A DNA stretch of 64,000 bases. Origin: Anaeramoeba ignava BMAN. Its lineage: Eukaryota; Protista; Anaeramoebae. Made by a program: the position numbers and the translations under genes. Positions 3,781 through 64,000 of the stretch are shown here, one piece after another. The DNA lies in contig JAPDFW010000136.1 of the NCBI GenBank assembly GCA_028826165.1, forward strand, positions 806,001 through 870,000, written 5' to 3'. The notes beneath the pieces were generated by a model. That model was not told the DNA's origin, ran no database searches, and worked only from the letters and a program-made list of their open reading frames with translations. The stretch's first letter is position 1, and every line of letters starts with the position of its first letter.

Positions 3781-5671
3781 ATGAATGATTGTTTATTTTT
3801 TGGTGAAAATGAATTTAATTCGCTTATAAAAGAAGAACCAAATAAAATCCCAAAACCAATTCAATTTAAAATCAAAATTAAGAAAGAAAATGAAAATGAA
3901 AATGAAAATGAAAAATGAAAATGAAAATGAAAATGAAAATGAAAATGAAAATGAAAATGAAAATGAAAATGAAAATGAAAATGAAAATCAAATTAAACAA
4001 ATTAAACAAATTAAACAAATTTCAACAGGAGAGTATCCAACAATTATCCTTTTTAAAAATGGAAAAGCAATAGAGTATTCAAGAAATATAATTGAAAATC
4101 CTCAAGAAATCCAAATTGAAGAAAATATTCAAAAAGTAACTGTTAGTTCTCAAGATGAAGCTATTTTAACAATAGAAGGAAATGTATTTGCCAAAGGAAC
4201 TTATATTAATTCAGGAAATCTATATGAATTTACCAATGTTTCATCATTAATTGAAGATAAAAATGATAGAATAATTAAAGATATTGTTTCTGGAGAAAGT
4301 TCAATTTACTTATTAACTTCAAATCAAAATGCTTATGGAATTGGTTTAAATTTTCATGGCCAAATTGGTTTTGATTCTAAAACAGTCGACCTAGGAGACA
4401 AACCAATTTTAATGATGAAAAATGTTTCTAAAATATTTTCAGGAAGCTCTTTTCATGTTTTTCTTTTAAATTCAAATCAAGAATTATTTGGATGCGGAAA
4501 TAATGCATTTAGTGTGCTTGGATTAGGAGAATCAAGAAAAGAAAAAAAAATTGATAAATTAACTCAAATCCAAAATATTCCAAAAGGTAAAATAATTGAT
4601 ATTCAATGTGGATATTATCACTCAATAATGTTGGTTGAAAATGAAAATCAAAATCCAAAAAGAAAACTTTATTCATGCGGAAGTTGGCAAAAAAATGGGC
4701 TTGGTAAAAATAAAGAAGATACTTATGAATTTACTGAAATCAAATCATCTTTATTTGAAAATGATTATATTCTTGATTTTTCTGTTGGTAATTTCCATAC
4801 TTTGATTTTAACTTCTAATTCAAAATTGATTGGATTCGGGAATAATTCTTATGGTCAATTAGGAAATGGAACTACTTCTTTAAATCAATTAATTCCTATT
4901 CAAATTGAACTTCCTAAATTAAGATTTAATGAAGAAATTTCCAATTATCATCTTTCTTGTGGAGATGAAAAATCATTTCTTTATTATTCTCCTTTTTTTC
5001 TTTTTCCAATATTGAAGAAGATTTGATAAAATTATTTCAGAAGAAAAGAATTTTGTAATATTTCATTTAAAACCAAAAATGGAGAAATAATTGAAGCTCA
5101 TAAATTAATATTGAAATATAGATTAAATCAAAATCAAAATCAAAATGAAATTGAAAAACTTCAAGAAATTATTTCAAATAAATCAATTAAAGAATCAAAT
5201 CAAATATTTGAAATGATTTATTCAAACAATTCCAAAATAAATCCAATATTATATTCCGAAATTAAAGAAATTATAAATTTAAATGAAAAAATTGAAGAAA
5301 CAATGAAAAGAATTTATTTAAATGAAAATGAAAATGAAAAAGATTTTATAATTGAAAGAAAAGAAAACCAATATAAATTTCCAAAATTAATATTAATAAT
5401 GAGAAGTGAATTATATAGAGGAATGTTTTTATCTGTAACAAATGATACTTCTAATAAAGTTACAGATTATAGTGAATTAAGTAATAAATCATTTCAAATA
5501 TTAGAATATTGGATTTATTCAAATCAAATTAAAGATGAAATTAAAATTACAAAAGAAATTATTAATGAAATTAAAATTGGAATTGATTATTTCCAATTAA
5601 ATCAAACAAATCCAAATTTATTTGATTTATTAATTAACAAATTTAATAATCAAAACCAAAATCAAAATTAA
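3781..5671 (+). CDS. RCC1-repeat + tandem BTB protein, copy A (frameshifts in the GAAAAT tract near 3910 and near 5000-5040)
   Basis: Starts MNDCLFFGEN at 3781 like the other copies. RCC1 repeats (GxNxxGQLG, CGYYHSIML, VGNFHTLIL) followed by BTB-like segments (FCNISFK..IEAHKLILKYR; DFIIER..FPKLILIMRSELYRGMF). Ends NQNQNQN*. Confidence 0.8.
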
Positions 5672-5749
5672 AATTAAAATTAAAATTAAAATCAAAAATT
5701 AAAATTAAAATTCATTTTTTCATTTTTTTCATTTTTTTCATTTTCAAAA

Positions 5750-7955
5750 ATGAATGATTGTTTATTTTTTGGTGAAAATGACAAACCAAAACTTATCAAA
5801 AATAAACCAAATAAAATAAAAAAACCAATTCAATTTAAATTTGAATTTGAAAATCAAAATGAAAATGAAAAACAAATTAAACAAATTTCAACAGGAGAGT
5901 ATCCAACAATTTTCATTTTTAAAAATGGAAAAGCAATAGAATATTTAAGATATTCAGATCCAAATCCTCAAAAAATCCAAATTGAAAATATTCAAAAAGT
6001 AACTGTTGGTGATCATAATGTAGCTATTTTAACAAAAGAAGGAAATGTATTTGCCAAAGGAAATTATATTCCGTTAGATAATTACAATAAATTTGCCGAT
6101 ATTTCATCATTAATTGAAGATAAAAATGATAGAATGATTAAAGATATTGTTTCTGGAGAAAGTTCAATTTACTTATTAACTTCAAATCAAAATGTTTATG
6201 GAATTGGTTCAAATTATAATGGCCAACTTGGTTTAGATTCTGAAACACTTGAAAAAGCAGAAAAACCAATTTTAATGATGAAAAATGTTTCTAAAATATT
6301 TTCAGGAAATTCTTCAAAGCGTGTTTTTCTTTTAAATTCAAATCAAGAATTATTTGGATGCGGTGATAATGAAAATGGTCAACTTGGATTAGGGTATTCA
6401 AGAGAAGAAGAAACAAAAATTGATAAATTAACCAAAATCCAAAATATTCCAAAAGGCAAAATAATTGATATTAAATCAGGAACTTTTCATTCAGTAATGT
6501 TGATTGAAATTGAAAATCAAAATCAAAATCAAAATCAAAATCAAAATCAAAATCAAAATCAAAATCAAAATCAAAATCAAAATCAAAATCAAAATCAAAA
6601 TCAAATCCAAAATCAAAATCAAAATCAAAATCAAAATCAAAATCAAAATCAAAATCAAAATCAAAATCAAAATCAAAATCAAAATCAAAATCAAAATCAA
6701 AATCAAAATCAAAATCAAAATCAAAATCAAAATCAAAATCAAAATCAAAATCAAAATCAAAATCAAAATCAAAATCAAAAAAAAATCAAAATCAAAATCA
6801 AAATCAAAATCAAAATCAAAATCAAAATCAAAATCAAAATCAAAATCAAAATCAAAATCAAAATCAAAATCAAAATCAAAATCAAAATCAAAATCAAAAT
6901 CAAAATCAAAATCAAAATCAAAAAAGAAAACTTTATTCATGTGGATATTATGGATTTAATGGTCTTGGAAAATATGTGGATAGTTATGAATTTACTGAAA
7001 TCAAATCATCTTTATTTGAAAATGATGAAAATATTGTTGATTTTTCTGTTGGATATGCACATAGTTTGATTTTAACTTCCAAAGGGAAATTAATAGGATT
7101 TGGAAGTAATGAATATGGTGAATTAGGAACTGGAGATAAAAAAGAATATGGACTTAATCTTATTCAAATTAAACTTCCTAAATTAAGATTTAAAGAAGAA
7201 ATTTACAATTATCATATTTCTTGTGGATATGAAAAATCATTTATTTATTATTCTCCTTCTCTTTCTTCTTTTTCCAATCTTGAAGAAGATTTGATAAAAT
7301 TATTTGGAAGAAAAGAATTTTGCGATATTTCATTTAAAACAGAAAATGAAGAGGTGATTGAAGCTCATAAATTAATATTGAAATATAGATTAAATCAAAA
7401 TCAAAATGAAATTGAAAATGAAATTGAAAAACTTCAAGAAATTATTTCAAATAAATCAATTAAAGAATCAAATCAAATATTTGAAATGATTTATTCAAAT
7501 AATTCCAATATAAATCCAAAATTATATTTAGAAATTAAAGAATTTATAAATTTAAATGAAAAATTGAAGAAACAATGAAAAGAATTTATTTAAATGAAAA
7601 TGAAAAAGATTTTATAATTGAAAGAAAAGAAAACCAATATAAATTTCCAAAATTAATATTAATAATGAGAAGTGAATTATATCGAAAAATGTTTTTATCT
7701 GTAACAGATGATACTTCTAATAAAGTTACAGATTATAGTGAATTAAGTGAAGAATCATTTCAAATATTTGAATATTGGATTTATTCAAATCAAATTAAAG
7801 ATGAAATTCAAATTACACAAGAAATTATTGATGAAATTAAAATTGGAATTGATTATTTCCAATTAAATCAAACAAATCCAAATTTATTTGATTTATTAAT
7901 TAACAAATTTAATAATCAAAATCAAAAAAAGAAAGATAAATGTTTAATTTTTTAA
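5750..7955 (+). CDS. RCC1-repeat + tandem BTB protein, copy B, with a large (NQ)n insertion and C-terminal polybasic CaaX (KKKDKCLIF)
   Basis: ORFs 5750-7069, 6976-7578 and 7575-7955 are collinear with copies A and C. The frame breaks lie in A-runs (about 6780/6920 and 7560). Confidence 0.8.
6510..6921 (+). repeat. (CAAAAT)n microsatellite within copy B coding region, poly-(Asn-Gln)
   Basis: About 400 bp of near-perfect CAAAAT, at a position where copies A and C have only ENENQN or EDENQN. Confidence 0.95.
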
Positions 7956-8167
7956 AAAAGAAATTATTAATGAAATTAAAATTAGAATTGATTATTTTCA
8001 ATTAAATCAAACAAATCCAAATTTATTTGATTTATTAATTAACAAATTTAATAATCAAAACCAAAATCAAAATTAAAATTAAAATTAAAATCAAATTTAA
8101 AATTAAAATTTAAAATCAAAAATTAAAATTCATTTTTTCATTTTTTTCATTTTTTTCATTTTCAAAA

Positions 8168-10070
8168 ATGAATGATTGTTTATTTTTTGGTTTAAATAGA
8201 AATTTAATTCTTATCAAAAATGGATCAAATAGAATAACAAAACCAATTCAATTTAAATTTGAAAATAAAAATGAAAATGAAAATGAAAAACAAATTAAAC
8301 AAATTTCAACAGGTGAATTTCCAACAGAAAAATATTCAATAATTTTCCTTTTTGAAAATGGAAAAGCAATAGAATATTTAAATGAAGAATATTTATCATA
8401 TCCAGATCGAAATCTTCAAAAAATCCAAATTGAAGAAAATATTCAAAAAGTAACTGTTGGTCATCAAAATGAAGCTATTTTAACAATAGAAGGAAATGTA
8501 TTTGCAAGAGGAATAAATATTACTGGGCATTTATCAGATCTATTTATCAATATTTCATCATTAATTGAAGATATAAATGATAGAATAATTAAAGATATTG
8601 TTTCTGGAGAAAATTCAATTTATTTATTAACTTCAAATCAAAATGCTTATGGAATTGGTTTAAATAGACATGGTCAACTTGGTTTAGATTATAAAACACT
8701 TAAAAAAACAAAAAAACCAATTTTAATGATGAAAAATGTTTCTAAAATATTTTCAGGAAATTATTCAAATCGTGTTTTTCTTTTAAATTCAAATCAAGAA
8801 TTATTTGTATCTGGATGGAACCAATATGGTCAACTTGGATTAGGAGAATCAAGAAAAGAAGAAACAAGAATCAAAAAATTAACCAAAATCCAAAATATTC
8901 CAAAAGGTAAAATAATTGATATTCAATGTGGGACTGATCATTCAATAATGTTGATTGAAGAAGAAGATGAAAATCAAAATCCAAAAAGAAAACTTTATTC
9001 ATGTGGCTATTGGAAAAATAATGGACTTGGCAAAAGAAAATACTTATGAATTTACTGAAATCAAATCATCTTTATTTGAAAATGATGATGATTATATTCT
9101 TGAAATTTCTGTTGGAGATACACATACTTTGATTTTAACTTCTCATTCAAAATTAATAGGATTTGGGAATAATGAACATGGTCAATTAGGAATTGAAGAT
9201 ACAAAAAATCAACCAATTCCAATTCAAATTGAACTTCCTAAATTAAGATTTAAAGAAGATATTTACAATTATCATATTTCTTGTGGATATGAAAAATCAT
9301 TTATTTATTATTCTCCTTCTCTTTCTCCTTTTTCCAATCTTGAAGAAGATTTGATAAAATTATTTGGAAGAAAAGAATTTTGTGATATTTCATTTAAAAC
9401 CAAAAATGGAGAAATAATTGAAGCTCATAAATTAATATTGAAATATAGATTAAATCAAAATCAAAATAAAATTGAAAAACTTCAAGAAATTATTTCAAAA
9501 AAATCAATTAAAGAATCAAATCAAATATTTGAAATGATTTATTCAAACAGAATATTAAATCCAAAATTATATTCTGAAATTAAAGAAATTATAAATTCCA
9601 ATGAAAAAATTGAAGAAACAATGAAAAGAATTTATTTAAATGAAAATGAAAATGAAAAAGATTTTATAATTGAAAGAAAAGAAAAACAATATAAATTTCC
9701 AAAATTAATATTAATAATGAGAAGTGAATTATATCGAGGAATGTTTTTATCTGTAACTGAAGATAAATCAAATAAAGTTACAGATTATAGTGAATTAAGT
9801 AATAAATCATTTCAAATATTTGAATATTGGATTTATTCAAATCAAATCAAAAAAGGAATTGAAATTACACAAGAAATTATTGATGAAATTAAAACTGGAA
9901 TTGATTATTTTCAATTAAATCAAACAAATCCAAATTTATTTGATTTATTAATTAACAAATTTAATAATCAAAATCAGAAAAAGAAAGATAAAAGAAAACC
10001 TTTTTTAGAAAAAGAAATATTTAATGAAATTAAAATTAAGAAAAAGAAAGATAAAAGTTTAATTTTTTAA
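8168..10070 (+). CDS. RCC1-repeat + tandem BTB protein, copy C (one frameshift near 9030-9040)
   Basis: ORFs 8168-9049 and 8955-10070 join into a full-length paralog ending KKKKDKSLIF*. Confidence 0.82.
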
Positions 10071-24180: not shown

Positions 24181-26607
24181 ATGAAACCTTTATCAAAAAA
24201 CAAAACTGAAAAAAACTCAAAAAAATCAACACAATCAATGTATATTTCCCACATAAACTTATTTAATTAATTATTCAAATATTTATTCAATTATTTATTC
24301 AAATATTTATTTAATTATTTATTTAATTATTTATTCATATATTTATTTAAATATTTATTTAATTATTTATTCAAATATTTATTCAAATATTTATTCAAAT
24401 ATTTATTCAAATATTTATTTAAATATTTATTCAAATATTTATTCAAATATTTATTCAAATATTTATTTAAATATTTATTTAATTATTTATTTGATTATTT
24501 ATTTGATTATTTATTCAAATATTTATTCAAATATTTATTTAATTATTTATTCAAATATTTATTCAAATATTTATTCAAATATTTATTTAATTATTTATTT
24601 AATTATTTATTTTAATTATTTATTCAAATATTTATTTAAATATTTATTCAAATATTTATTTAATTATTTATTTAATTATTTATTCAATTATTTATTCAAA
24701 TATTTATTCAAATATTTATTTAAATATTTATTCAATTATTTATTCAAATATTTATTCAAATATTTATTCAAATATTTATTTAATTATTTATTCAAATATT
24801 TATTCAATTATTTATTCAAATATTTATTCAAATATTTATTCAAATATTTATTTAATTATTTATTCAAATATTTATTTAATTATTTATTCATTTATTTAAT
24901 TATTTATTTAAATATTTATTTAATTATTTATTCAAATATTTATTTAATTATTTATTCATTTATTTAATTATTTAAATATTTAGAATCTCCATCTCAAAAA
25001 TTCAACAATTTAAAGGAAATAAAGCACTTAAACTATGGGTACAATACTTGAAATTACTCAAACAAAAAAATCAAATGACATCAACACAACTAATTGAAAT
25101 CTATGAAAAATGCACAGATCACTTGCACCAATTTGAAGAACTTAACTCAAATATTAAATACCTTCGAATTTGGATCGAATATGCAAATTTCTATCCAGAT
25201 TCAACTGATATTTTCCAATTTCTTCAACAAAAAAAAATTGGATTAAAACATTCACTATTTTATATTGCGTTCGCAACAGTTCTTGAAAACAAAAAAGAAT
25301 TCCAAAAAGCATATGATATTTATCAAGAAGGATTCACTCATTACGCAACACCAAAAGAAAGACTTGAAATTCGTTTCCAAGAATTTTTGAAACGAGTTAT
25401 CTTCCTTTATCAACAAAATCCTCAATTAATTAATCCTGATCCTCTTCATCCACTTTCCCAATTCTTATCTTCTCAACCCAAAAAAATTGAACAAGAAAAA
25501 CCTCTTGATTTGAATCCTAAATCAAACTCAAATTTTTCTTTAATTTTAACACCAAATTTCACTTCAAAACCCAAAAACGATTCCATTTCTTCTCAAAAAG
25601 ATATAGTTCTTGGCTCATCAAAAACTCAACAGAAAATTCTCAATGAAAAACCTTTTTATGACTCTTCGCTTCTAATTTATAATAACGAAGAAATGAGTTT
25701 TGAAGAAGCAAGAGCACTTAATCATAAATACAAAAAAGAAGAAAAAATAACGGTTGTTAAAGAAGTTCCCAGTCAAAAAGTGGAACATTCTGAAAATATA
25801 TCTGAACAGCAAAATCCTTCGCAAAATGTTGATATTTTCTCTACTACTTTTAATTTCGATGAAATCCCAGAAAATACAACTTTGCAATTTGGTTTTCTTC
25901 AACACATTTCCCGCAAACTTACATTTGGAAATTTCGAACAAGATGAACAAACCACACAAGAACAATCTGTTCCCCAAGATTCCATGCAAACCACAATATC
26001 AGACCCTAATCATTCCCAATATAAATCATCACACAAAGAAGCAACTCCAAAGCACAATCCCATTCAAACATCAACTCCTTCACCAACAATAAACACTAAA
26101 ATTGCGGCCAATGATATAATGAGCATGTTCCAAGATCCTCTTGAAATTGATGATTCATTGAAAAAAGATCCCAATCAAGAAGAAATTTCACTTAATTTGG
26201 TTCCTCAAAATCAATTCCAAAAACAATCAACTAATTTCACTATTTTTTGCGATCCAAATACTTCAAAAAACCCTCCTTCAAAAAAATCATCCGCAAAAAA
26301 CAAGAACCTAAAGAATCATCATTCAAAAGGTTCTGTGAAAAATTCGAAAAAAAGACTTGCGGATCAACAAAACTCAAAGATAAGAAGAAAAAACACTAAT
26401 AAATTAAAAGAAATTTCAGTTAAAAAAAATCAAATTAACAAAAATCAAGTTAAAAAAAAAACTAAAAAATCTTCTTTAAAGAAAAAACCACTTTCAACAA
26501 TTCAACAATATGATCTTAATGATGAAAATGGAATTTACAATGAAAATAAAATTGCTCCAAAAAAAATTTTTAATCGAGATGTTCTTCAATCAATTTTAAA
26601 TAATTAA
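24181..26607 (+). CDS. Bub1/Mad3-family spindle checkpoint protein lacking the kinase domain; exons 24181-24239 and 24984-26607
   Basis: Mad3/BUB1 TPR region (YLRIWIEYA..DIFQFL..KKIG...LFYIAFA..LE..A..IYQEG....ATPKERL), GLEBS-like EEMSFEEARA, CD1-like TPSPTINTKIAANDIMSMFQ, ABBA-like FTIFCD. The intron is filled with (TATTTATTCAAA)n. Confidence 0.85.
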
Positions 26608-42740: not shown

Positions 42741-45700
42741 ATGACTTCTACAACAATTCTTGAATTAACACGTTCTTTACATCAAGAAATTGAATCTAAA
42801 ATTGAAAAAGCATCACAATTAATGATACATGAATTTTCTTCAAGAAAAGATACAGTAATTAAAGAACATAAAATAAAAAATTTAATAGAAGATGTTCAAA
42901 ATTTAAGTCAAAAATTATTAGATATTTATATGGATAGAGACGGGTAAATTAAATTAAAATTCATTTATATAATTAAAATTAAAATTAAATTTAAAATTAA
43001 AATTCATTTATAAAATTAAAATTAAAATTAAATTTAAAATTAAAATTCATTTATAAAATTAAAATTAAAATTAAAATTAAAATTCATTTATAAAATCAAA
43101 ATTAAAATAAAAATTCAAATTGGGGTTTTAAAATTAAAATTAAAATTTTAAAAATAAAATTACTATTAAAATTTTGAAACAAGAAAATCCTAATTTTAAA
43201 ATTCTTTTTAAAATTAAAATTCCCCAAAAATTTAAAACTAAAAAAAAACAAAAAAATTTTTAAAAATCTTTTAAAAATTTGTAATTAAAATTAAAGTTGA
43301 CATAAACTTGATCAAATTCAATTTAAAATTAAAACTAAAAATTAAAATTAAAATTCATTTTGATAAAAAAAAATTAAAATTGAATTTAAAAATTATCACT
43401 ATCAAAAACGCAAAAATCAAAAATCAAATCCAAAATTAAAATTCAAAAGAAAAATTTAAAATTGATTTGAAAAATATAAAATTTAAAATTAAAACCACAA
43501 GAAATTTGGAAATTATAATTCCCGACTTAAGGAAAATTTAAAATTAAAATTTTCTCAAAGACACCAAATGATAATTGAAAAATTAAAATTTTATTATCAA
43601 AAATTAAAATTAAAAGAAATTATCATCTTAAAATTCAAAATTAAAATTATAATTAAAATTTAATTTTTGTAAAATTTTTAAAATTAAAAATTTTAAAAAT
43701 AAAATAAAAAATAAATTTTTATTTAAAAATTAAAGTTTTTCTTAAAATTAAAATTAAAAAAAAATTGTCAAAAAATTAAAATTAGGATTTTTGAATTAGA
43801 TTTTTATTGTGTTTTAAAATTATTTTTAAAATTCAATTTAAAATTAAAATTAAAATTAAAAATTAAAATCAAAATTAAAATTAAAATTAAAATTAAAATA
43901 AAAATTAAAATTAAAATTAAAATTAAAATCAAAATTAAAATTAAAATTATAATTAAAATTTAAATTAAAATTCATTTATAAAATTAAAATTAAAATTAAA
44001 ATTTAAAATTAAAATTAAAATTAAAATTAAAATTAAAATTAAAATTATAATTAAAATTCATTTATAAAATTAAAATTTAAATTAAAATTTAAAATTCATT
44101 TATAAAATTATATAGAGTTAGAGAACAAGAATTAAAACAAATTAGTGGAGATACTGTATTCACTTCTTTTTATGACCGTTTAAATTCTATTAAAACTTAT
44201 TACCGAAAAAATCCAAATGAAGATTTTACAATTCCTTCAATGACTGTTCTTGAAGACTTTATTCCTATTAAAAACACAGAAAACCATCTTGAAACACTAG
44301 AAGCCTTAAAAAAAGAAACAGAAAAAATAGATGAGGAAAAAGTTGAAGCGTTATTTTTAGGAGAAGAACATTTCGGAAACTTTATAGATTTAAATATTTT
44401 TTATCAAAAATTTATGAATTTAAAACTTGAGAAATATTTGCCCAAAATGGTGAAATCCACAAACCAAAACGAAAAAGAAAAACCACTTGATTATATATCC
44501 TATTTGGGGATATTTAATGAATTTATGTTTATTCCTGAAAATATCAAATTATGGAAATCATATAGAAATTACTTGAATGAATTAATGGATTATCTTATAA
44601 ATTTTATTAAACGTTCTCGTCCTTTATTTAATCTAAAAAGAGCAATGGAAATTATACATAACGATTTTAAACAAGGTTGGGAAAATGGATATTTCCAACC
44701 CAAATGGAAAAAAACAAATCAAAATGATGGAAATAATCAAAGCAAAAAAAATGTTGATGATAATGAAGTCAATCAAAATGATCAAATTTTAATCACAAAT
44801 GAAAACAAAAAATCAGAGGAATTGAATCATAATCATCTTTATTGTGAATACTGCAAAAAACAATTTGCAAAAGATACTGTTTTTCAAGTTCATCTTAAAG
44901 GAAAAAAACATCAAAAAAATATGAATAGAAAAATCAAACAAGAAGAAAATAAAATGAAATCATTTGAAGAATTTTCAAGATATGAATTTATTATCACAAA
45001 ATTAACACAAATTCTTCATGAAGTTATTAAAAAAACAATCGAAAATACTGTTAGAAAACAAACTTTAACTTATGAAGAACTTCAAAGAGAAATTCTTGAT
45101 GCTGAAGAAGAAGATAATCATGAAAATGCTGATGAAAATGCTGATGAAGATATTGAAGATGATGAAGATATGTTTTATAATCCAAAAGGCTTACCATTAG
45201 GTATAATTTATTAAAATTCATTTATAAAATTAAAATTCATTTATAAAATTAAAATTCATTTATAAAATTAAAATTCATTTATAAAATTAAAATTCATTTA
45301 TAAAATTAAAATTAAAATTAAAATTAAAATTAAAATTAAAATTAAAATTAAAATTAAAATTAAAATTAAAATTAAAATTAAAATTAATATTAAAATTCAT
45401 TTATAAAATTAAAATCGGATAAAAATTAAAATTAAAATTCATTTATAAAATTAAAATTAAAATTAATTTATAAAATTAAAATTCATTTATAAAATTAAAA
45501 TTAAAATTAAAATTAAAATTAAAATTAAAATTAATATTAAAATTAATATTAAAATTCATTTATAAAATTAAAATTAAAATTAAAATTAAAATTAAAATTA
45601 AAATTAAAATTAAAATTAAAATTAAAATTAAAATTAAAATTAAAATTATTAAATAGGATGGGATGGAAAACCAATTCCATATTGGTTATATAAATTAAAT

Positions 45701-56601: not shown

Positions 56602-59476
56602 ATGAATTGGAAACATTTACGAACATTTTGCAAAATTTTTGTAGGAATAGTAACAGGAGAATCTATAACGATGATAGTATTATTAATAGTATATTTAACG
56701 ACGACATCAGAACAGAATTTAGAAGAAGGACATATTAAATTTTACACAACAATTTATATAGCAACAACAATAACGGTTGCAATTTTTGCTTTTTTAATAG
56801 TTATTTATCAAAATATTTTTCAACTCTTCACTTTTGCTATTGCTCATGTTCTTCTTACTAGTTATATGTTATATGATTTCTTAACTAGTACTGCGAAAAT
56901 TCGTTTCGGTTTTTTGTTTCTTATTCTTATTTGTGATGCTCTTTATATTTATACTTTATGGAGAATTTATTTTGAAGTTAAATGGGATTTTTGGCAAAGG
57001 GCTGGAACTAGCTCAAGAATGCAAAGTACTTTCATTTAATAATCCTTCCAGAAATACATTCAAATTTAATAATAATTTTAATAATAAATTTAATAATAAT
57101 TTTAATAATAAATTTAATAATAATTTTAATAATAATTTTAATAATAATTTTAATAATAATTTTAATAATAATTTTAATAATAATTTTAATAATAATTTTA
57201 ATAATAATTTTAATAATAATTTTAATAATAATTTTAATAATAATTTTAATAATAATTTTAATAATAATTTTAATAATAATTTTAATAATAATTTTAATAA
57301 TAATTTTAATAATAATTTTAATAATAATTTTAATAATAATTTTAATAATAAATTTTAATAATAAATTTAATAATAATTTTAATAATAATTTAAATAATAA
57401 ATTTAATAATTTTAATAATAATTTTAATAATAATTTTAATAATAATTTTAATAATAATTTTAATAATAATTTTAATAATAAATTTAATAATAAATTTAAT
57501 AATAAATTTAATAATAATTTTTAATAATAATTTTAATAATAAATTTAATAATAAATTTAATAATAATTTTAAATAATAAATTTAATAATAATAATTTTAA
57601 TAATAATTTTAATAATAATTTTTATAATAAATTTAATAATAATAATTTTAATAATAAATTTAATAATAAATTTAATAAATTTATTTAATAATAATTTTAA
57701 TAATAAATTTAATAATAAATTTTATAATAAATTTAATAATAATTTTAATAATAAATTTAATAATAAATTTAATAATAAATTTAATAAATAATTTAATAAT
57801 AATTTTAATAATAATTTTAATAATAATAATTTTAATAATAATTTTAATAATAAATTTAATAATAAATTTAAATAATAAATTTAATAATAATTTAAATAAT
57901 AAATTTAAATAATAAATTTAATAATAATTTTAATAATAAATTTAATAATAAATTTAATAAATAATTTAATAATAATTTTAATAATAATTTTAATAATAAA
58001 TTTAATAATCAATTTAATAATAATTTTAATAATAATTTTAATAATAAATTTAATAATAAATTTAATAATAATTTTAATAATAAATTTAATAATAAATTTA
58101 ATAATAATTTTAATAATAAATTTAATAATAAATTTAATAATAAATTTAATAATAATTTTAATAATAATTTTAATAATAATTTTAATAATAAATTTTTTAT
58201 AATTTGCTTTGTTTTAGCACTTTATAAATTATGGTCAATTTTCCTCAATATACTTCAAGTAAATTGTATGTTGGATTTTATTCTTGATTTATCAAGTTGT
58301 GCACTTCTTTTTTCATTTCATTCTTTTGGAACTTATCTTGATATATTTGGAATGATTCTTGTATTTATTTGGTTTTGGGTTGGTTACTCAGCTGTATTAA
58401 TTATTCCTTTATTTGAATTCAAAATTAAAATCAAAATTAAAATCAAAAATTAAAATTAAAATCAAAATCAAAATTAAAATCAAAATTAAAATCAAAATCA
58501 AAATCAAAATCAAAATTAAAATTAAAATCAAAATCAAAATCAAAATTAAAATCAAATTTAAAATTAAAATTAAAATTAAAATTAAAATTAAAATTAAAAT
58601 TAAAATCAAAATCAAAATCAAAATCAAAATCAAAATTAAAATAAAAATTAAAAATAAAATTAAAATTAAAATCAAAATCAAAATCAAAATCAAAATTAAA
58701 ATTAAAATTAAAATTAAAATTAAAATTAAAATCAAAATCAAAATTTAAAATTAAAATCAAAATTAAAATTAAAATTAAAATTAAAATTAAAATCAAAATT
58801 AAAATCAAAATTAAAATTAAAATTAAAATTAAAATTAAAATTAAAATTAAAATTAAAATTAAAATTAAAATTTAAAATTAAAATTAAAATTAAAATTAAA
58901 ATCAAAATTAAAATTAAAATCAAAATCAAAATCAAAATCAAAATTAAAATCAAAATCAAAATCAAAATCAAAATTAAAATTAAAATTAAAATTAAAATCA
59001 AAATTAAAATCAAAATTAAAATTAAAATTAAAATTAAAATTAAAATTAAAATTAAAATTAAAATTAAAAATTAAAATTAAAATTAAAATTAAAATTAAAA
59101 TTAAAATTAGTATAAATATGAATATCCAAAAAGAATATATTTTTTCTTTGGTTTATCTGTTCTTCAACCAACTTGGACTATTATTAAATGGGCAGGATTT
59201 GATATAGAAGGAAAAAATAATTCAAAATACAATACGGGACCATATAATACATATCGAGGAATAGCAATAGTTTCATTAATTGCAAGAATTGCTGCTATAG
59301 TTTTTGCTTTAATTGGATTTTTACATTTTGGTGAAGGTTTAAAAGATCGTTTATTAGAAAAATATATGGATGAAAATACTTTTTTAACAGATCCTCAAAT
59401 TGAAAATACTGGAATTCAAAATAGTGATGGTGATGATGATGAAGATGATGATGAAACTTCAACAGAAGATTTTTAA
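56602..59476 (+). CDS. Multi-pass membrane protein, possibly related to the fungal UPF0658 family; exons 56602-57025, 58218-58393, 59111-59476
   Basis: In-frame GT-AG splicing gives about 8 hydrophobic segments. YQNIFQL, YFEVKWDFWQRAG and HFGEGLK resemble the family's N.IQ, EF.W..Y...GAD and NF..GLK patterns (recalled, not searched). Acidic tail. Confidence 0.7.
57026..58217. repeat. Intronic (AATAATAATTTT)n array
   Basis: About 1.2 kb, nearly pure A/T 12-mer. Confidence 0.92.
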
Positions 59477-59489
59477 AATCAACATTTAA

Positions 59490-60050
59490 TTCAAAAACAA
59501 TCCAAAATTTATTTCAAAAACAATCCAAAATTTAATTTAATTTAATATTTAATTTAAGATTTAATTTAATATTTAATTTAAGATTTAATTTATTATTTAA
59601 TTTCAAATTTAAGATTTAATTTAATTTAAGATTTAATTTCAAATTTAATTTAATTTAAGATTTAATTTCAAATTTAATTTAATATTTAATTTAATATTTA
59701 ATTTAAGATTTAATTTAATTTCAAATTTAATTCATTATTTAATTTATTATTTAAAATTTAAAATTTATTTCAAAAACAATCCAAAATTTATTTCAAAAAC
59801 AATCCAAAATTTATTTCAAAAACAATCCAAAATTTATTTCAAAAACAATCCAAAATTTAATTTAAGATTTAATTTAAGATTTAATTTATTATTTAATCCA
59901 AAATTTAATTTAATATTTAATTTAAGATTTAATTTAAGATTTAATTTATTATTTAATTTCATATTTAATTTAATATTTAAAATTTATTTCAAAAACAATC
60001 CAAGATTTAAGATTTAATTTAAGATTTAATTTAAGATTTAATTTAATATT
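59490..60050. repeat. Intergenic repeats between convergent genes: AATTTAAGATTT units and a 23-bp AAAATTTATTTCAAAAACAATCC unit
   Basis: The 23-mer occurs in tandem at 59760-59855 and again near 59505 and 59980. Confidence 0.8.
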
Positions 60051-60358
60051 TAAAATTTCTTTTTTTGGATTTGTTTTTTTTTTTTATTTGTTCTCTTTTT
60101 TCAATTAAAAAGTAAATAAAAAAAATTGAAAAAAAAAAAAAGAATAAAAAAAATTTTTTTCCGATTTTGTTGTTCCTATTTGATTTTGTAAAAAAAAAAT
60201 AAAAAGAAGAGAACTAAAGAATTTTGAATAAATTCTGTTCAGTTGAAAGTAAAAAAAAAGAAATTAAAATAATTTGATTAAATTTTTAAAAAAAATATCT
60301 TTCTTTCTTTCTTTTTTGTTGTTGTTTTTTTTTTTTTGATTTTTTTTAGAAATAATTT

Positions 60359-63300
60359 TTAATCACTATCTTCAGTTTGAAATTCATTATCATTTTGATT
60401 ATCATTTTGATTTTGATTTTGATTTTGATTTTGATTTTCTTCAAGTTCAATTTCATTATCAGAATGAATTTTTGGATTATCGGATCCTAAAGATAATTCA
60501 TTATCATTTTGATTTTGATTTTGATTTTGATTTTGATTTTGATTTTGAATTTTGATTCGATTTTGATCTTGATCTTGATTTTGATTTTGATTATGATTAT
60601 GATTAGTTGTTCGAAGATCCATTTCTGCTTCAAGTAGTGTTAAATCAATTCCTTGTGTTACTTTTTTTTTTATTAAAATAAAATTAAAAATTTAAAATTT
60701 AAAATTTAAATTTAAAATTAAAATTAATTTACATCCTAATTGTTTTTGAATTTGTCTCATTTTTTCTCGATTTGCTCTATTAGCAATATTGAGAAAAACT
60801 TCTTCTAATGTTGTTAAACTGATAGCATAATCTTTAATTTGAAATTGAGATTTTGAATTATCTAAAAAATGAAATAAATCAGGAAGTGAAGAATTTGCAT
60901 TTCGAGGAACTGAAATAGTTAAAGTTGATGTTGATTCTTGAAGAAGACTAAAATTTTGAAATCTATTCAAGATTTCTGTTCTTAAAGGACCAGTTTGATT
61001 TTCTTCTGTGATAATATTGATTAAATATCCTGCTCCAAATTTATTCTTTAAATGTAAAGAAGTTCCTAAACATTGTAATTTTCCAGCAGCAAGAATAGCA
61101 ATTCTATCTGATAAAATATCTGCTTCTTCCATTGCTAAAAAAATCAAGAATATTTTTGAATTGAATTAAATATTTTGAATTGAATTAAATATTTTTATTT
61201 GAATTGAATTAAATATTTTGAATTGAATTAAATATTTTGAATTGAATTAAATATTTTGAATTGAATTAAATATTTTGAATTGAATTAAATATTTTTAAAT
61301 TGAATTAAATATTTTAAATATTTTAAATTGAATTAAATAATTTAAATATTTATTTGAAATATTTTGAATTGAATTAAATATTTTGAATTGAATTAAATAA
61401 TTGAAATATTTTGAATTGAATTTAATATTTTAAATTGAATTAAATAATTTAAATATTTTTAAATTAATTTAAATATTTTGAATTGAATTAAATAATTTAA
61501 ATATTTTGAATTGAATTAAATATTTTGAATTGAATTAAATATTTTGAATTGAATTAAATATTTTTGAATTGAATTAAATAATTTAAATATTTTGAATTGA
61601 ATTAAATAATTTAAATTGAATTTAATATTTTGAATTGAATTAAATATTTTTATTTAAATTAAATATTTTTGAATTGAATTTAATATTTTAAATTGAATTA
61701 AATATTTTGAATTGAATTAAATATTTTGAATTGAATTTAATATTTTGAATTGAATTAAATATTTTAAATATTTTTGAATTGAATTAAATATTTTAAATAT
61801 TTATTTGAAATATTTTTAAATTAATTTTAAACATTTTAAATTATTTTAAATATTTTAAATATTTATTTGAAAATATTTTTATTTGATTTGAAAATATTTT
61901 GATTTTATTACAATGTGTAGTTAAAAGAATAACTCGATCTTTCTTCGCTTTTTGAATAATATTCCAAATTTGTCTTCGAGCAACAGGATCAAGTCCTGTT
62001 GTGCATTCATCAAACAAACATACTTTAGGAGAACCAACTAAAGCAATTGCAAGAGAAAGTCTTCTTTTCATCCCTCCAGAAAAAGAAGAAACAAGACTAT
62101 TCTTTACATCAAGAAGATCAACATCTTTGAGTCTTTGGTCAATTTCTTCTTTGATTTCCTTTTTGGGAACATTTTTCAAATGAGCAAAAAGATCAAGAGT
62201 TTCTTTTGGAGTTAATTCATTCCATAAAATATCATGTTGAGGACAAACACCAAGATCTTTACGAATTTCTCCCAAATGTGACAGGATCGATTTATTCAAA
62301 ATTAAAGCATCTCCATATGTTGGTCTAAATCTCCCAATAAGCATGTTAATTGTTGTTGAGTTGTGAGTCACTGTGAAATCTTCCAAAAGAAATCTTCCAT
62401 TTCCGCTAATTTCAAATCCATAGTAATTTCCAACACAATCTTCTTCAACACTTATTGGTGCTGTCAAAATATCAACTGGTTTCTTTCCGTTTTGCTTATT
62501 TCTTGCAAATTCACTAATTTCGGATCCAAAAACGGAAATTAAATCGAAATTCGCATTTTTTTGATTGATTTGAACACCTAAACCCAATGAACGAATCGAA
62601 AAGAGAATTTTCTTCAGAATATTTTCATCTGATTTTTTTGAATTAATTTCAAATTCAAAGGTTTGATTCCCATTTTCATTTCCAATTGAATCAAAAATTC
62701 CTGATAAAAATGAGAGCCGAATTGCGCGTGAATTTGTTCTTATTAAGTCAAGTGTATCGCCAAATTCTGCGGTGATTGGAAGCACTTGTTGTGTCTCATC
62801 TGAACAAAAACGCGCCAAAAGAAAATCCAAATTGATAAGCTTCTTTCAAAGTGATTTTGTTATTGCAAGGAAATTCAACACCAACTTTGAATCCGTGATA
62901 ACAATCTTTCCATTCTTGAGATTTTGCAAGATAATCTTGAACAGAAATATCAACAACTTCACCTATTTTTGACATTAAAGGGATTTTTCTAGCGATGAAT
63001 TTTTTCAAGGAATTTCTGGCGCAATTTTCATCATTTGCAAAATTTTTGAGATGAAAAAACTTGTTCATTTGGTGGTGATCTTGGATCCAAACGAGAAGGA
63101 AGGCGTTTTTCTTAGGGAGAAAAGAAACGGAGTATTGTTTAATAAGTTTGAGAGAAAGAATATGGTGAGAATTAACGCGATAAAGAGATTTTGAGAAATT
63201 AGGATTTTTGGAAGAAGGGACAATTCGGTACAAAGGGGATCTTCCTTTTGTAAGAGAAAGTACTACGCGAGGCAAGGAATCATCGCCAAGAAGAAGATCA

Positions 63301-64000
63301 CCAATTTGGATATCTTGAACCATTTTTGACTCCCCATTGTACATTAAAACAGGCGTGTTTTCCGCTAGGCATTTCCCAGACCCATTCGGTCCCAGAAGAG
63401 CCAGAAGCTCGCCTTCATGAAGTGAAAGATACACAGAATCAACGGCGCGGAAATTATGGATTTTGGAATGAAGAAATGACTTGCGAAACTCTTTTGTCAA
63501 ATTTAGAATTTTAACAGTCGCGTTATTTTCTGTTTCATTGTTTGTAAGTGTTTTTTTCTCTTCAAGAACATCATCATCCATTGTGTTCTCATCATCCTCG
63601 TTTTCCAAATTCACTTTTTTGGAGGATTTTCTTTTTTTGGGTTTTCTTTTGCCAGTCCAATATGATTTCTGAAGGAAAAATAACGGATGTTGAGTGATCC
63701 CGTAATCAGTAGGTAAAACTTGGTCGAGATATAAAGCAAGAACAATATAAATCGCAAAATCAATGAGCATCCAATAATAGCATGTTGTCAATGGATAAAT
63801 TTGGCCGTTGCTTCGTTCCGACCAAGACATTCCAGGCATAGATTTCATTTTTGTTGCTGTGGCGAGTAATTGTACTCCTCGTGCAAATACTACTGGTGAT
63901 AGAAATGAAAAACCTGTTCGGTAGCTTTTATCGATTCCTGGCTCAAATATCACATTGTTCGTGATAGGGTTTAATATCGTAAACACAAAGAAAAATACAA
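60359..64000 (-). CDS. ABCA-subfamily ABC transporter, 3' part, intein-containing; exons >64000-61912, 61134-60733, 60660-60359
   Basis: TM segment WMLIDFAIYIVLALYLDQVLP.DYG...PLFFL. NBD: AVDSVYL..ELLALLGPNGSGK//STT, GVCPQHDILW..LT..E.L, signature FSGGMKRRLSLAIAL, Walker B CLFDECTTGLDP, H-loop LTTHSMEEADILSDRI, LHLKNKFGAGY, TTLEEVFLNI. The frame is open to the window edge. Confidence 0.93.
61135..61911. repeat. ABCA intron filled with (TATTTTGAATTGAATTAAA)n
   Basis: The GT-AG intron interrupts the H-loop codons (CAT T|CA ATG); 19-bp unit. Confidence 0.9.
62360..63371 (-). mobile_element. Intein (~337 aa) with a degenerate LAGLIDADG homing endonuclease, inserted in the ABCA Walker A motif
   Basis: Block A CLAENTPVLMYNG, block B VNSHHIL, EN-like AYQFGFSFGAF, RLSFLSGIFDSIG and ILFSIRSLGL, block F YYGFEISGNGRFLL, block G FTVTHN, +1 Ser. 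Excision restores GPNGSGKSTT. 1012 nt = 337 codons + 1 extra base near 62806-62810. Confidence 0.95.

What the first reader, a model, noticed from the sequence alone, without database searches (positions are those of the whole stretch)
62360..63371. Intein splitting the Walker A motif of a nuclear ABCA transporter
Seen: GPNGSGK is followed by CLAENTPVLMYNG...YYGFEISGNGRFLLEDFTVTHN and then STTINML. All canonical cis-splicing residues are present (Cys1, block B His, penultimate His, terminal Asn, +1 Ser), and removing the insert rebuilds a perfect P-loop. Known: inteins favour P-loop GK|S/T sites, but eukaryotic nuclear inteins are mostly confined to a few hosts such as VMA1, PRP8 and RNA polymerases. 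Anaeramoeba is a reported exception with many inteins, so this may belong to that set. Inference: the transporter cannot bind ATP until splicing occurs, so splicing gates its activity. A Cys1-dependent reaction in an anaerobe could be redox- or oxygen-sensitive.
Basis: partly seen in the sequence, partly recalled or inferred. Interest (0 to 1): 0.92.

Follow-up and report, generated by a model that had tools for sequence, protein, structure and literature searches.

The report
Known-type intein in Anaeramoeba ABCA transporter
A self-splicing protein insert does interrupt the ATP-binding loop of a membrane transporter in the amoeba Anaeramoeba ignava, but the genome is published as carrying about 100 such inserts, GenBank already labels this gene's sister copy as intein-containing, and nothing suggests the insert is a redox switch.

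Summary
Observation confirmed; the element is of a known, published kind. Minus strand 63371-62360 encodes a 337-aa class 1 intein of the VMA1/PRP8 (Hom_end) type between GK and S of Walker A in a one-NBD ABCA half-transporter. The assembly has one extra base near 62806-62811 that breaks the frame. Spliced-mRNA contigs from two studies lack that base and keep both intein junctions, so the insert is not an intron and the frameshift is very likely an assembly error. The genome is Anaeramoeba ignava (103 inteins published for strain BMAN, PMC10710043). A paralog on contig C3 has an intact intein at the same site, annotated in GenBank as intein-containing (KAJ5080784.1); the scan reported an A. 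ignava ABCA intein on other DNA before (s1-686540). The two inteins are sisters, as are their hosts. Splicing blocks are conserved, the homing endonuclease is decayed, and A. flamelloides relatives have an empty site. Redox gating has no support: +1 is Ser, and no second Cys is near the junctions or conserved. Side result: phage-like ABC ATPases carry a related intein at the same site, acquired independently. I could not see whether this exact copy is in the paper's dataset.

The parts
62360..63371 (-). Intein, 337 aa after removing one surplus base; class 1, VMA1/PRP8 (Hom_end) type
   Evidence: family profile hits PI-SceI E=1e-36; model of the paralog's intein matches PI-SceI, Foldseek E=2e-20, TM about 0.7
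63372..63392 (-). Walker A N-half GPNGSGK (end of N-extein)
   Evidence: uninterrupted GPNGSGK-T in A. flamelloides relatives
63369..63371 (-). Cys1 (block A nucleophile)
   Evidence: invariant in 63 related inteins
63162..63173 (-). Block B N67-S-H-H70 (B7 Asn, B10 His; lines up with N76/H79 of PI-SceI)
62807..62837 (-). Decayed first LAGLIDADG motif (catalytic Asp replaced by Ala), followed by a large deletion in the first endonuclease domain
   Evidence: alignment
62806..62811 (.). A5 run plus C: one surplus base in the assembly that causes the apparent frameshift
   Evidence: absent from contigs of runs X2 and X5
62681..62716 (-). Decayed second LAGLIDADG motif (D-S-I-G instead of D-S-D-G)
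62360..62425 (-). Blocks F and G, ending His-Asn
   Evidence: 84% identical to the paralog's intein over the last 25 residues
61912..62359 (-). C-extein: Ser+1 and the rest of the ABC nucleotide-binding domain (Q-loop, signature, Walker B, D-loop, H-switch)
63393..64000 (-). End of the ABCA transmembrane domain and start of the NBD; the gene continues beyond the window to about C126:873243
   Evidence: TIGR01257 hit; tblastn with the paralog
61135..61911 (-). GT-AG spliceosomal intron (777 nt, repeat-filled)
   Evidence: spliced out in X2 and X5 contigs (loose ends)
60733..61134 (-). Exon with NBD end and ABCA R1 regulatory domain
   Evidence: Pfam R1_ABCA1 E=7e-8
60661..60732 (-). Inferred 72-nt GT-AG intron
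   Evidence: sequence only; not checked against reads
60359..60660 (-). Inferred last exon and stop codon (low-complexity N/Q tail)
   Evidence: inference

Best explanation
A constitutively cis-splicing class 1 intein, a retained selfish element with a dead homing endonuclease. An intein of the VMA1/PRP8-type family that favours P-loops and is widespread in viruses and in this genome entered the GK|S site of an ABCA half-transporter gene once, in the A. ignava lineage or with later loss in A. flamelloides. The gene then duplicated (C126 and C3 copies). The LAGLIDADG nuclease decayed while the splicing blocks stayed under selection, because only precise excision restores Walker A. The mRNA keeps the intein (shown). 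The cytosolic precursor then most likely splices by the four-step route: Cys1 N-S shift helped by His B10, transfer to Ser+1, Asn cyclisation helped by the penultimate His, O-N shift (inferred from class 1 chemistry, PMC4031507). The product is an ABCA half-transporter that presumably dimerises and exports lipid (inferred from family). The frameshift is an assembly error (strongly supported).
For: Junction residues and Pfam hits. mRNA contigs from two studies keep both junctions, lack the surplus base and show no joint skipping the intein. Paralog with intact 369-aa intein at the identical site, annotated as such in GenBank. Paralog intein identity is 59%, 58% and 84% in splicing segments against 27-32% in the insert, nuclease and linker. 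Inteins are sisters at 99/92 and 96; hosts are sisters at 99/98 to the exclusion of four intein-free A. flamelloides proteins. Both catalytic aspartates are lost, with a deletion. Model of the paralog's intein pLDDT 88, PI-SceI fold. Three other Anaeramoeba inteins were shown to splice (PMC10710043).
Against: No direct splicing or proteomic evidence for this intein. The DNA-type runs did not cover 62811. No single contig spans the whole intein. The structure model is of the C3 paralog's intein, not of the window copy. Gain in A. ignava versus loss in A. flamelloides cannot be separated, and the donor intein is unresolved.
Confidence: 0.85

Rival explanations
1. Domesticated conditional-splicing switch: oxidation of Cys1 blocks splicing and so gates ABCA activity by oxygen or redox state.
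For: Cys1 is present; redox-responsive inteins exist (PMC6195587 abstract; PMC5784728); the intein is kept in both duplicates despite a dead nuclease.
Against: Ser+1, no Cys near either junction, no second Cys shared between the paralogs. A. flamelloides, also anaerobic, has intein-free relatives. At least 23 of 31 family members in this genome are in Walker A of unrelated hosts. Retention is explained by the difficulty of precise loss.
Confidence: 0.07
2. The frameshift is real on the assembled haplotype: one allele is a pseudogene and only the intact allele is seen in RNA, or the base is removed by RNA editing.
For: RNA contigs also differ from the assembly at 62060 and 63333 (synonymous); a DNA-type contig begins right at 63334; no DNA coverage at 62811.
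Against: The indel is at a homopolymer run. Run X2 shows two expressed variants near 63216 (depth about 640 and 920), while the contig carrying the deletion has depth about 1390, close to their sum, so both expressed forms appear to lack the base. All ABC motifs are intact.
Confidence: 0.06
3. The element cleaves or splices poorly and this ABCA copy is largely non-functional, covered by other paralogs.
For: Long branches (about 1 substitution per site each); Cys1 with Ser+1 needs thioester-to-ester transfer; other ABCA genes exist in the genome.
Against: Strong conservation of the splicing blocks and of the NBD (77% to the paralog); expressed and spliced mRNA; Ser/Thr+1 with Cys1 is the rule in this family.
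Confidence: 0.02

Closest known systems
A. ignava KAJ5080784.1 'intein-containing abc transporter a family member 1-related precursor' (contig C3 paralog)
   Same: Same host family and architecture, identical insertion site GPNGSGK|STT, sister intein, decayed nuclease.
   Different: 369 vs 337 aa; 42% intein identity (141/332) and about 62% extein identity; intact frame in the assembly. The window copy did not come up in the protein searches (withheld or not modelled; cannot tell).
Anaeramoeba intein set of Gallot-Lavallee et al. 2023 (PMC10710043), probably network cluster 15
   Same: Same species; the paper's Prp8-f site AKWK/TAEE and its 550-aa maximum intein size for strain BMAN both occur in this genome. 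Related inteins sit in Prp8, VMA, Lon, MCM and dynein; intron near the site in an intein-free paralog.
   Different: The main text never mentions ABC transporters and Dataset S1 is not held. Its P-loop homing figure concerns cluster 1 (apparent class 3) inteins, whereas this one is class 1. Cluster 15 assignment is my inference.
Sce VMA1 intein / PI-SceI and Cryptococcus Prp8 intein
   Same: HINT fold with inserted DNA-binding region and LAGLIDADG-type domain; block B N-x-x-H; Gly at F4; His-Asn end.
   Different: Ser+1 rather than Cys+1; nuclease catalytic residues lost; host is an ABC NBD.
Inteins in Walker A of phage-like ABC ATPases (P0017, P0021, P0175; metagenomic, unnamed)
   Same: Same intein family, same GK|S/T position in an ABC transporter NBD.
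   Different: Intact LAGLIDADG motifs; prokaryotic-type ABC ATPase host; a single clade with the A. ignava ABCA inteins is rejected (AU p=0.0008), so independent invasions.

Membership tests
Class 1 intein | In-frame insertion in a host protein, retained in mRNA | tested here: met
   (both junctions in RNA-run contigs, no skipping joint, surplus base absent)
Class 1 intein | Cys/Ser1, His B10, His-Asn end, Cys/Ser/Thr +1 | tested here: met
   C1, H70, H336-N337, S+1; definition from PMC4031507
Class 1 intein | HINT fold / Hint-family profile match | tested here: met
   PF05203 above cut-off for the window copy; fold match for the paralog's intein
Class 1 intein | Exteins rebuild a host protein matching empty alleles | tested here: met
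   four A. flamelloides proteins with GPNGSGK-TTTINML
Class 1 intein | Demonstrated protein splicing with extein ligation | not testable with these tools
   needs reporter or proteomics
Class 3 intein (paper's cluster 1 P-loop inteins) | No N-terminal nucleophile; Cys at F4 | tested here: not met
   Cys1 present, Gly at F4
Mobile LAGLIDADG homing intein | Catalytic acidic residues in both LAGLIDADG motifs, full domain | tested here: not met
   both Asp lost and first domain partly deleted, in both paralogs
Redox-trapped conditional intein | Second Cys able to pair with Cys1 (extein Cys near the junction, Cys+1 or conserved intein Cys) | tested here: not met
Redox-trapped conditional intein | Splicing depends on redox state in assay | not testable with these tools
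   wet-lab test
ABCA half-transporter | ABC2-type TMD, single NBD with intact motifs, R1 domain; nearest relatives annotated ABCA | tested here: met
Published A. ignava BMAN intein catalogue | This exact copy listed in Dataset S1 (complete or pseudogenised) | not testable with these tools
   supplement not held; sister copy annotated in GenBank

The most novel reading that the evidence does not exclude
The intein, fixed in two duplicated ABCA genes long after its nuclease died, has been domesticated as an oxygen- or redox-sensitive switch for a lipid exporter in an anaerobic eukaryote. As far as I know that would be the first regulatory intein on a eukaryotic membrane transporter. A smaller novelty, more likely (about 0.4): this copy is missing from the 103 complete inteins or was filed as a pseudogene because of the one-base error, and other 'pseudo-inteins' in the assembly are also intact.
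Probability: 0.06. Interest if true: 0.75.

Novelty: already known. Interest (0 to 1): 0.2.

Why it matters
Modest. It is a clean example of an intein in a membrane-transporter ATPase and a natural pair of paralogous inteins for studying nuclease decay. It shows that single-base assembly errors can make intact inteins look pseudogenised in this genome. The independent occupation of the ABC Walker A site in phage-like ATPases adds to the known P-loop preference. It would matter much more only if conditional splicing were shown.

Tried and rejected
Intron removal of the insert: rejected. Single-sequence AlphaFold failed (pLDDT 35) and was repeated with a 63-sequence alignment. Direct descent from the phage-like ABC-ATPase inteins: rejected (AU p=0.0008). 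Origin from the A. ignava SMC1-like intein, which has the same GPNGSGK|S site: neither shown nor rejected (AU p=0.27; not sisters in the free trees). Other eukaryotic ABCA proteins with this intein: none among the ABC hits, though both lists were capped and dominated by two-NBD proteins. Paper searches for ABC-transporter inteins gave nothing relevant in their listings (the two hits were not read); Novikova 2016 and Green 2018 main texts never mention ABC. One alignment call failed on wrong coordinates and was redone. The read-corrected intein and the intein-excised part of one exon were built only inside scripts for local alignment and trees.

Full report
Observation. The N-terminal piece hits Pfam Hom_end_hint (E=3e-15, above cut-off); the C-terminal piece hits Hom_end (E=1e-5, above cut-off) and ABC_tran, whose profile is split at position 25 across the insert. 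With the insert removed, Walker A, Q-loop, signature, Walker B, D-loop and H-switch are all intact. A downstream exon encodes the ABCA R1 domain, and the upstream exons run beyond the window to about C126:873243. The paralog has one TMD and one NBD, so this is an ABCA half-transporter.

Frameshift. The insert is 1012 nt in the assembly, and its two halves lie in different frames. I laid four public runs on 61880-64000. Two runs, X2 and X5, from two studies, are mRNA-derived although not labelled so: their contigs stop matching at 61912 and continue with bases 61134 and below, which splices out a GT-AG intron at 61135-61911. Both lack one base at about 62811, beside an A5 run. Removing it gives a 337-aa open intein, the same whichever base of the run is dropped. 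The spliced contigs cross the C junction, other contigs of the same runs cross the N junction, and no joint skips the intein, so it is not removed at RNA level. Caveats: no single contig spans the whole element, and the DNA-type runs did not cover 62811. X2 shows two expressed variants near 63216 whose depths roughly add up to that of the contig carrying the deletion, so both appear to lack the base. A long-read homopolymer error is the best reading.

Identity of the genome and prior knowledge. A paralog on contig C3 carries an intact 369-aa intein at the identical site. It is 100% identical to KAJ5080784.1, which GenBank names 'intein-containing abc transporter a family member 1-related precursor [Anaeramoeba ignava]'. 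The genome also holds the Prp8 site AKWK/TAEE and a 550-aa intein, both given for strain BMAN in PMC10710043, which reports 103 complete inteins plus pseudogenised ones found by tBLASTn. That paper reports homing among P-loops of unrelated proteins and introns near empty sites in paralogs. Its main text does not name ABC transporters and its dataset is not held, so I cannot say how this copy was filed. An earlier agent of this scan reached the same verdict for an A. ignava ABCA intein on another piece of the genome (s1-686540); I had the GenBank label independently.

Intein class and fold. C1, N67-x-x-H70 (block B), Gly at F4, H336-N337 and S+1 meet the class 1 definition. A family profile matches PI-SceI end to end (E=1e-36) and the Cryptococcus Prp8 inteins. 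A model of the C3 intein built with a 63-sequence alignment has pLDDT 88 and matches PI-SceI (E=2e-20, TM about 0.7). I could not fold the window copy whole, because it cannot be given by reference across the frameshift.

Homing endonuclease. Against relatives with intact motifs, the window intein has lost the catalytic Asp of both LAGLIDADG motifs and much of the first nuclease domain; the C3 copy is decayed in the same places. It is almost certainly not mobile.

History. The two ABCA inteins are 42% identical overall, with 59%, 58% and 84% in the splicing segments and 27-32% elsewhere, the pattern expected from selection on splicing alone. They are sisters in intein trees (SH-aLRT 96; 99/92). 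Their hosts are sisters (99/98) beside a clade of four A. flamelloides proteins whose Walker A is uninterrupted. One insertion before an A. ignava-lineage duplication is the simplest account; homing between the paralogs, or loss in A. flamelloides, cannot be excluded. The genome gives 67 matches to this intein family. Of 31 I extracted, at least 23 sit in Walker A motifs, with hosts recognised from their flanks as SMC, Lon, dynein, MCM, RecQ, GTPases and others (only Lon was database-checked). The donor is unresolved: a clade with the SMC1-like intein, which shares GPNGSGK|S, is neither supported nor rejected (p=0.27). A third, more distant ABCA gene on C82 has no intein but a phase-0 intron 15 nt upstream of the site, in line with the paper's intron-blocks-homing idea.

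ABC sites elsewhere. Public relatives are mostly inteins in P-loops of proteins such as thymidine kinase, RFC, DnaB and helicases. Three unnamed metagenomic ABC ATPases carry one at the same GK|S/T site with intact nuclease motifs. They lie in phage-like contigs next to an OmpA-domain gene, and an intein-free relative occurs on an IMG/VR contig (L099). A single clade of these with the Anaeramoeba ABCA inteins is rejected (AU p=0.0008, LG+G4, 42 rows after dropping long or redundant ones), so the ABC P-loop was invaded at least twice. I found no other eukaryotic ABCA with an intein among capped hit lists.

Mechanism. Shown: expression, retention in mRNA, intact catalytic residues, intact ABC motifs, dead nuclease. 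Inferred: four-step cis-splicing of a cytosolic precursor domain that restores Walker A, then an ABCA dimer exporting lipid. That ATP binding must wait for splicing is true of every P-loop intein and is not evidence of regulation. The redox idea has no anatomical support: +1 is Ser, there is no extein Cys near the junctions, and of the six and four cysteines in the two inteins only Cys1 aligns. A related anaerobe does without the intein. General sensitivity of Cys1 to oxidants cannot be excluded without an assay.

Verdict. A real intein, already known in kind, genome and host family. What this work adds is the read-level correction of the frameshift, the pre-duplication history, the decayed nuclease and the independent phage-like ABC case. 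Interest 0.2.

Noticed in passing
P0017 (L061), P0021 (L062/L063), P0175 (L064/L065); empty allele L099:1501-2313: Phage-like contigs encode an ABC ATPase with a full LAGLIDADG intein in Walker A, downstream of an OmpA-domain gene (and a weak BPD_transp_1 permease hit in L061). The three inteins form a clade; an intein-free relative is on a 143-kb IMG/VR contig. I found no paper on it.
   Followed up: partly
L060:about 4303-4780 (G000:C82, about 397.3-397.8 kb): Intein-free ABCA paralog with a phase-0 GT-AG intron inside Walker A (GP/NGAGK), 15 nt upstream of the intein site.
   Followed up: partly
G000:C92:283245-284248, C102:21399-22516, C137:156693-157564, C98:200093-200740: Other inteins of this family that did not extract as one open frame, two with stops reported. 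Some may be assembly errors like this one rather than pseudogenes.
   Followed up: no
L052:384-1214 (G000:C71, about 1.076 Mb): Intein placed so that its +1 Cys is the Cys of a protein-phosphatase-like H-C-x5-R motif, i.e. probably the catalytic nucleophile (recognised from flanks only).
   Followed up: no
L053 and L056 (G000:C60 about 831 kb; C61 about 539 kb): Sister inteins of 513 and 550 aa at the same site in two RBR/Ariadne-like E3 ligase paralogs (recognised from flanks): another shared-paralog case.
   Followed up: no
window about 63216, 62060, 63333, 63809: Run X2 shows two expressed variants near 63216; both RNA runs differ from the assembly at 62060 and 63333 (synonymous), and X5 alone at 63809 (Asn to Asp). 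Possible heterozygosity or assembly errors.
   Followed up: partly
window 61135-61911, 58420-59110, 59490-60050: Intronic and other non-coding stretches filled with short AT-rich tandem repeats, each with its own unit.
   Followed up: no
window 59357-64000 region, exon 61912-64000: The intein-bearing exon is GC-richer (33-37%) than the next exon (27%) and the window (16%).
   Followed up: no
window 3830-10070 (+): Tandem RCC1-repeat/BTB-like genes, some in several frames (introns or more single-base errors); recognised by eye only. Nearby ORFs look like a TLDc protein (1239-2204), Bub1/Mad3-like (25048-26607) and SF3a60-like (44240-45214).
   Followed up: no
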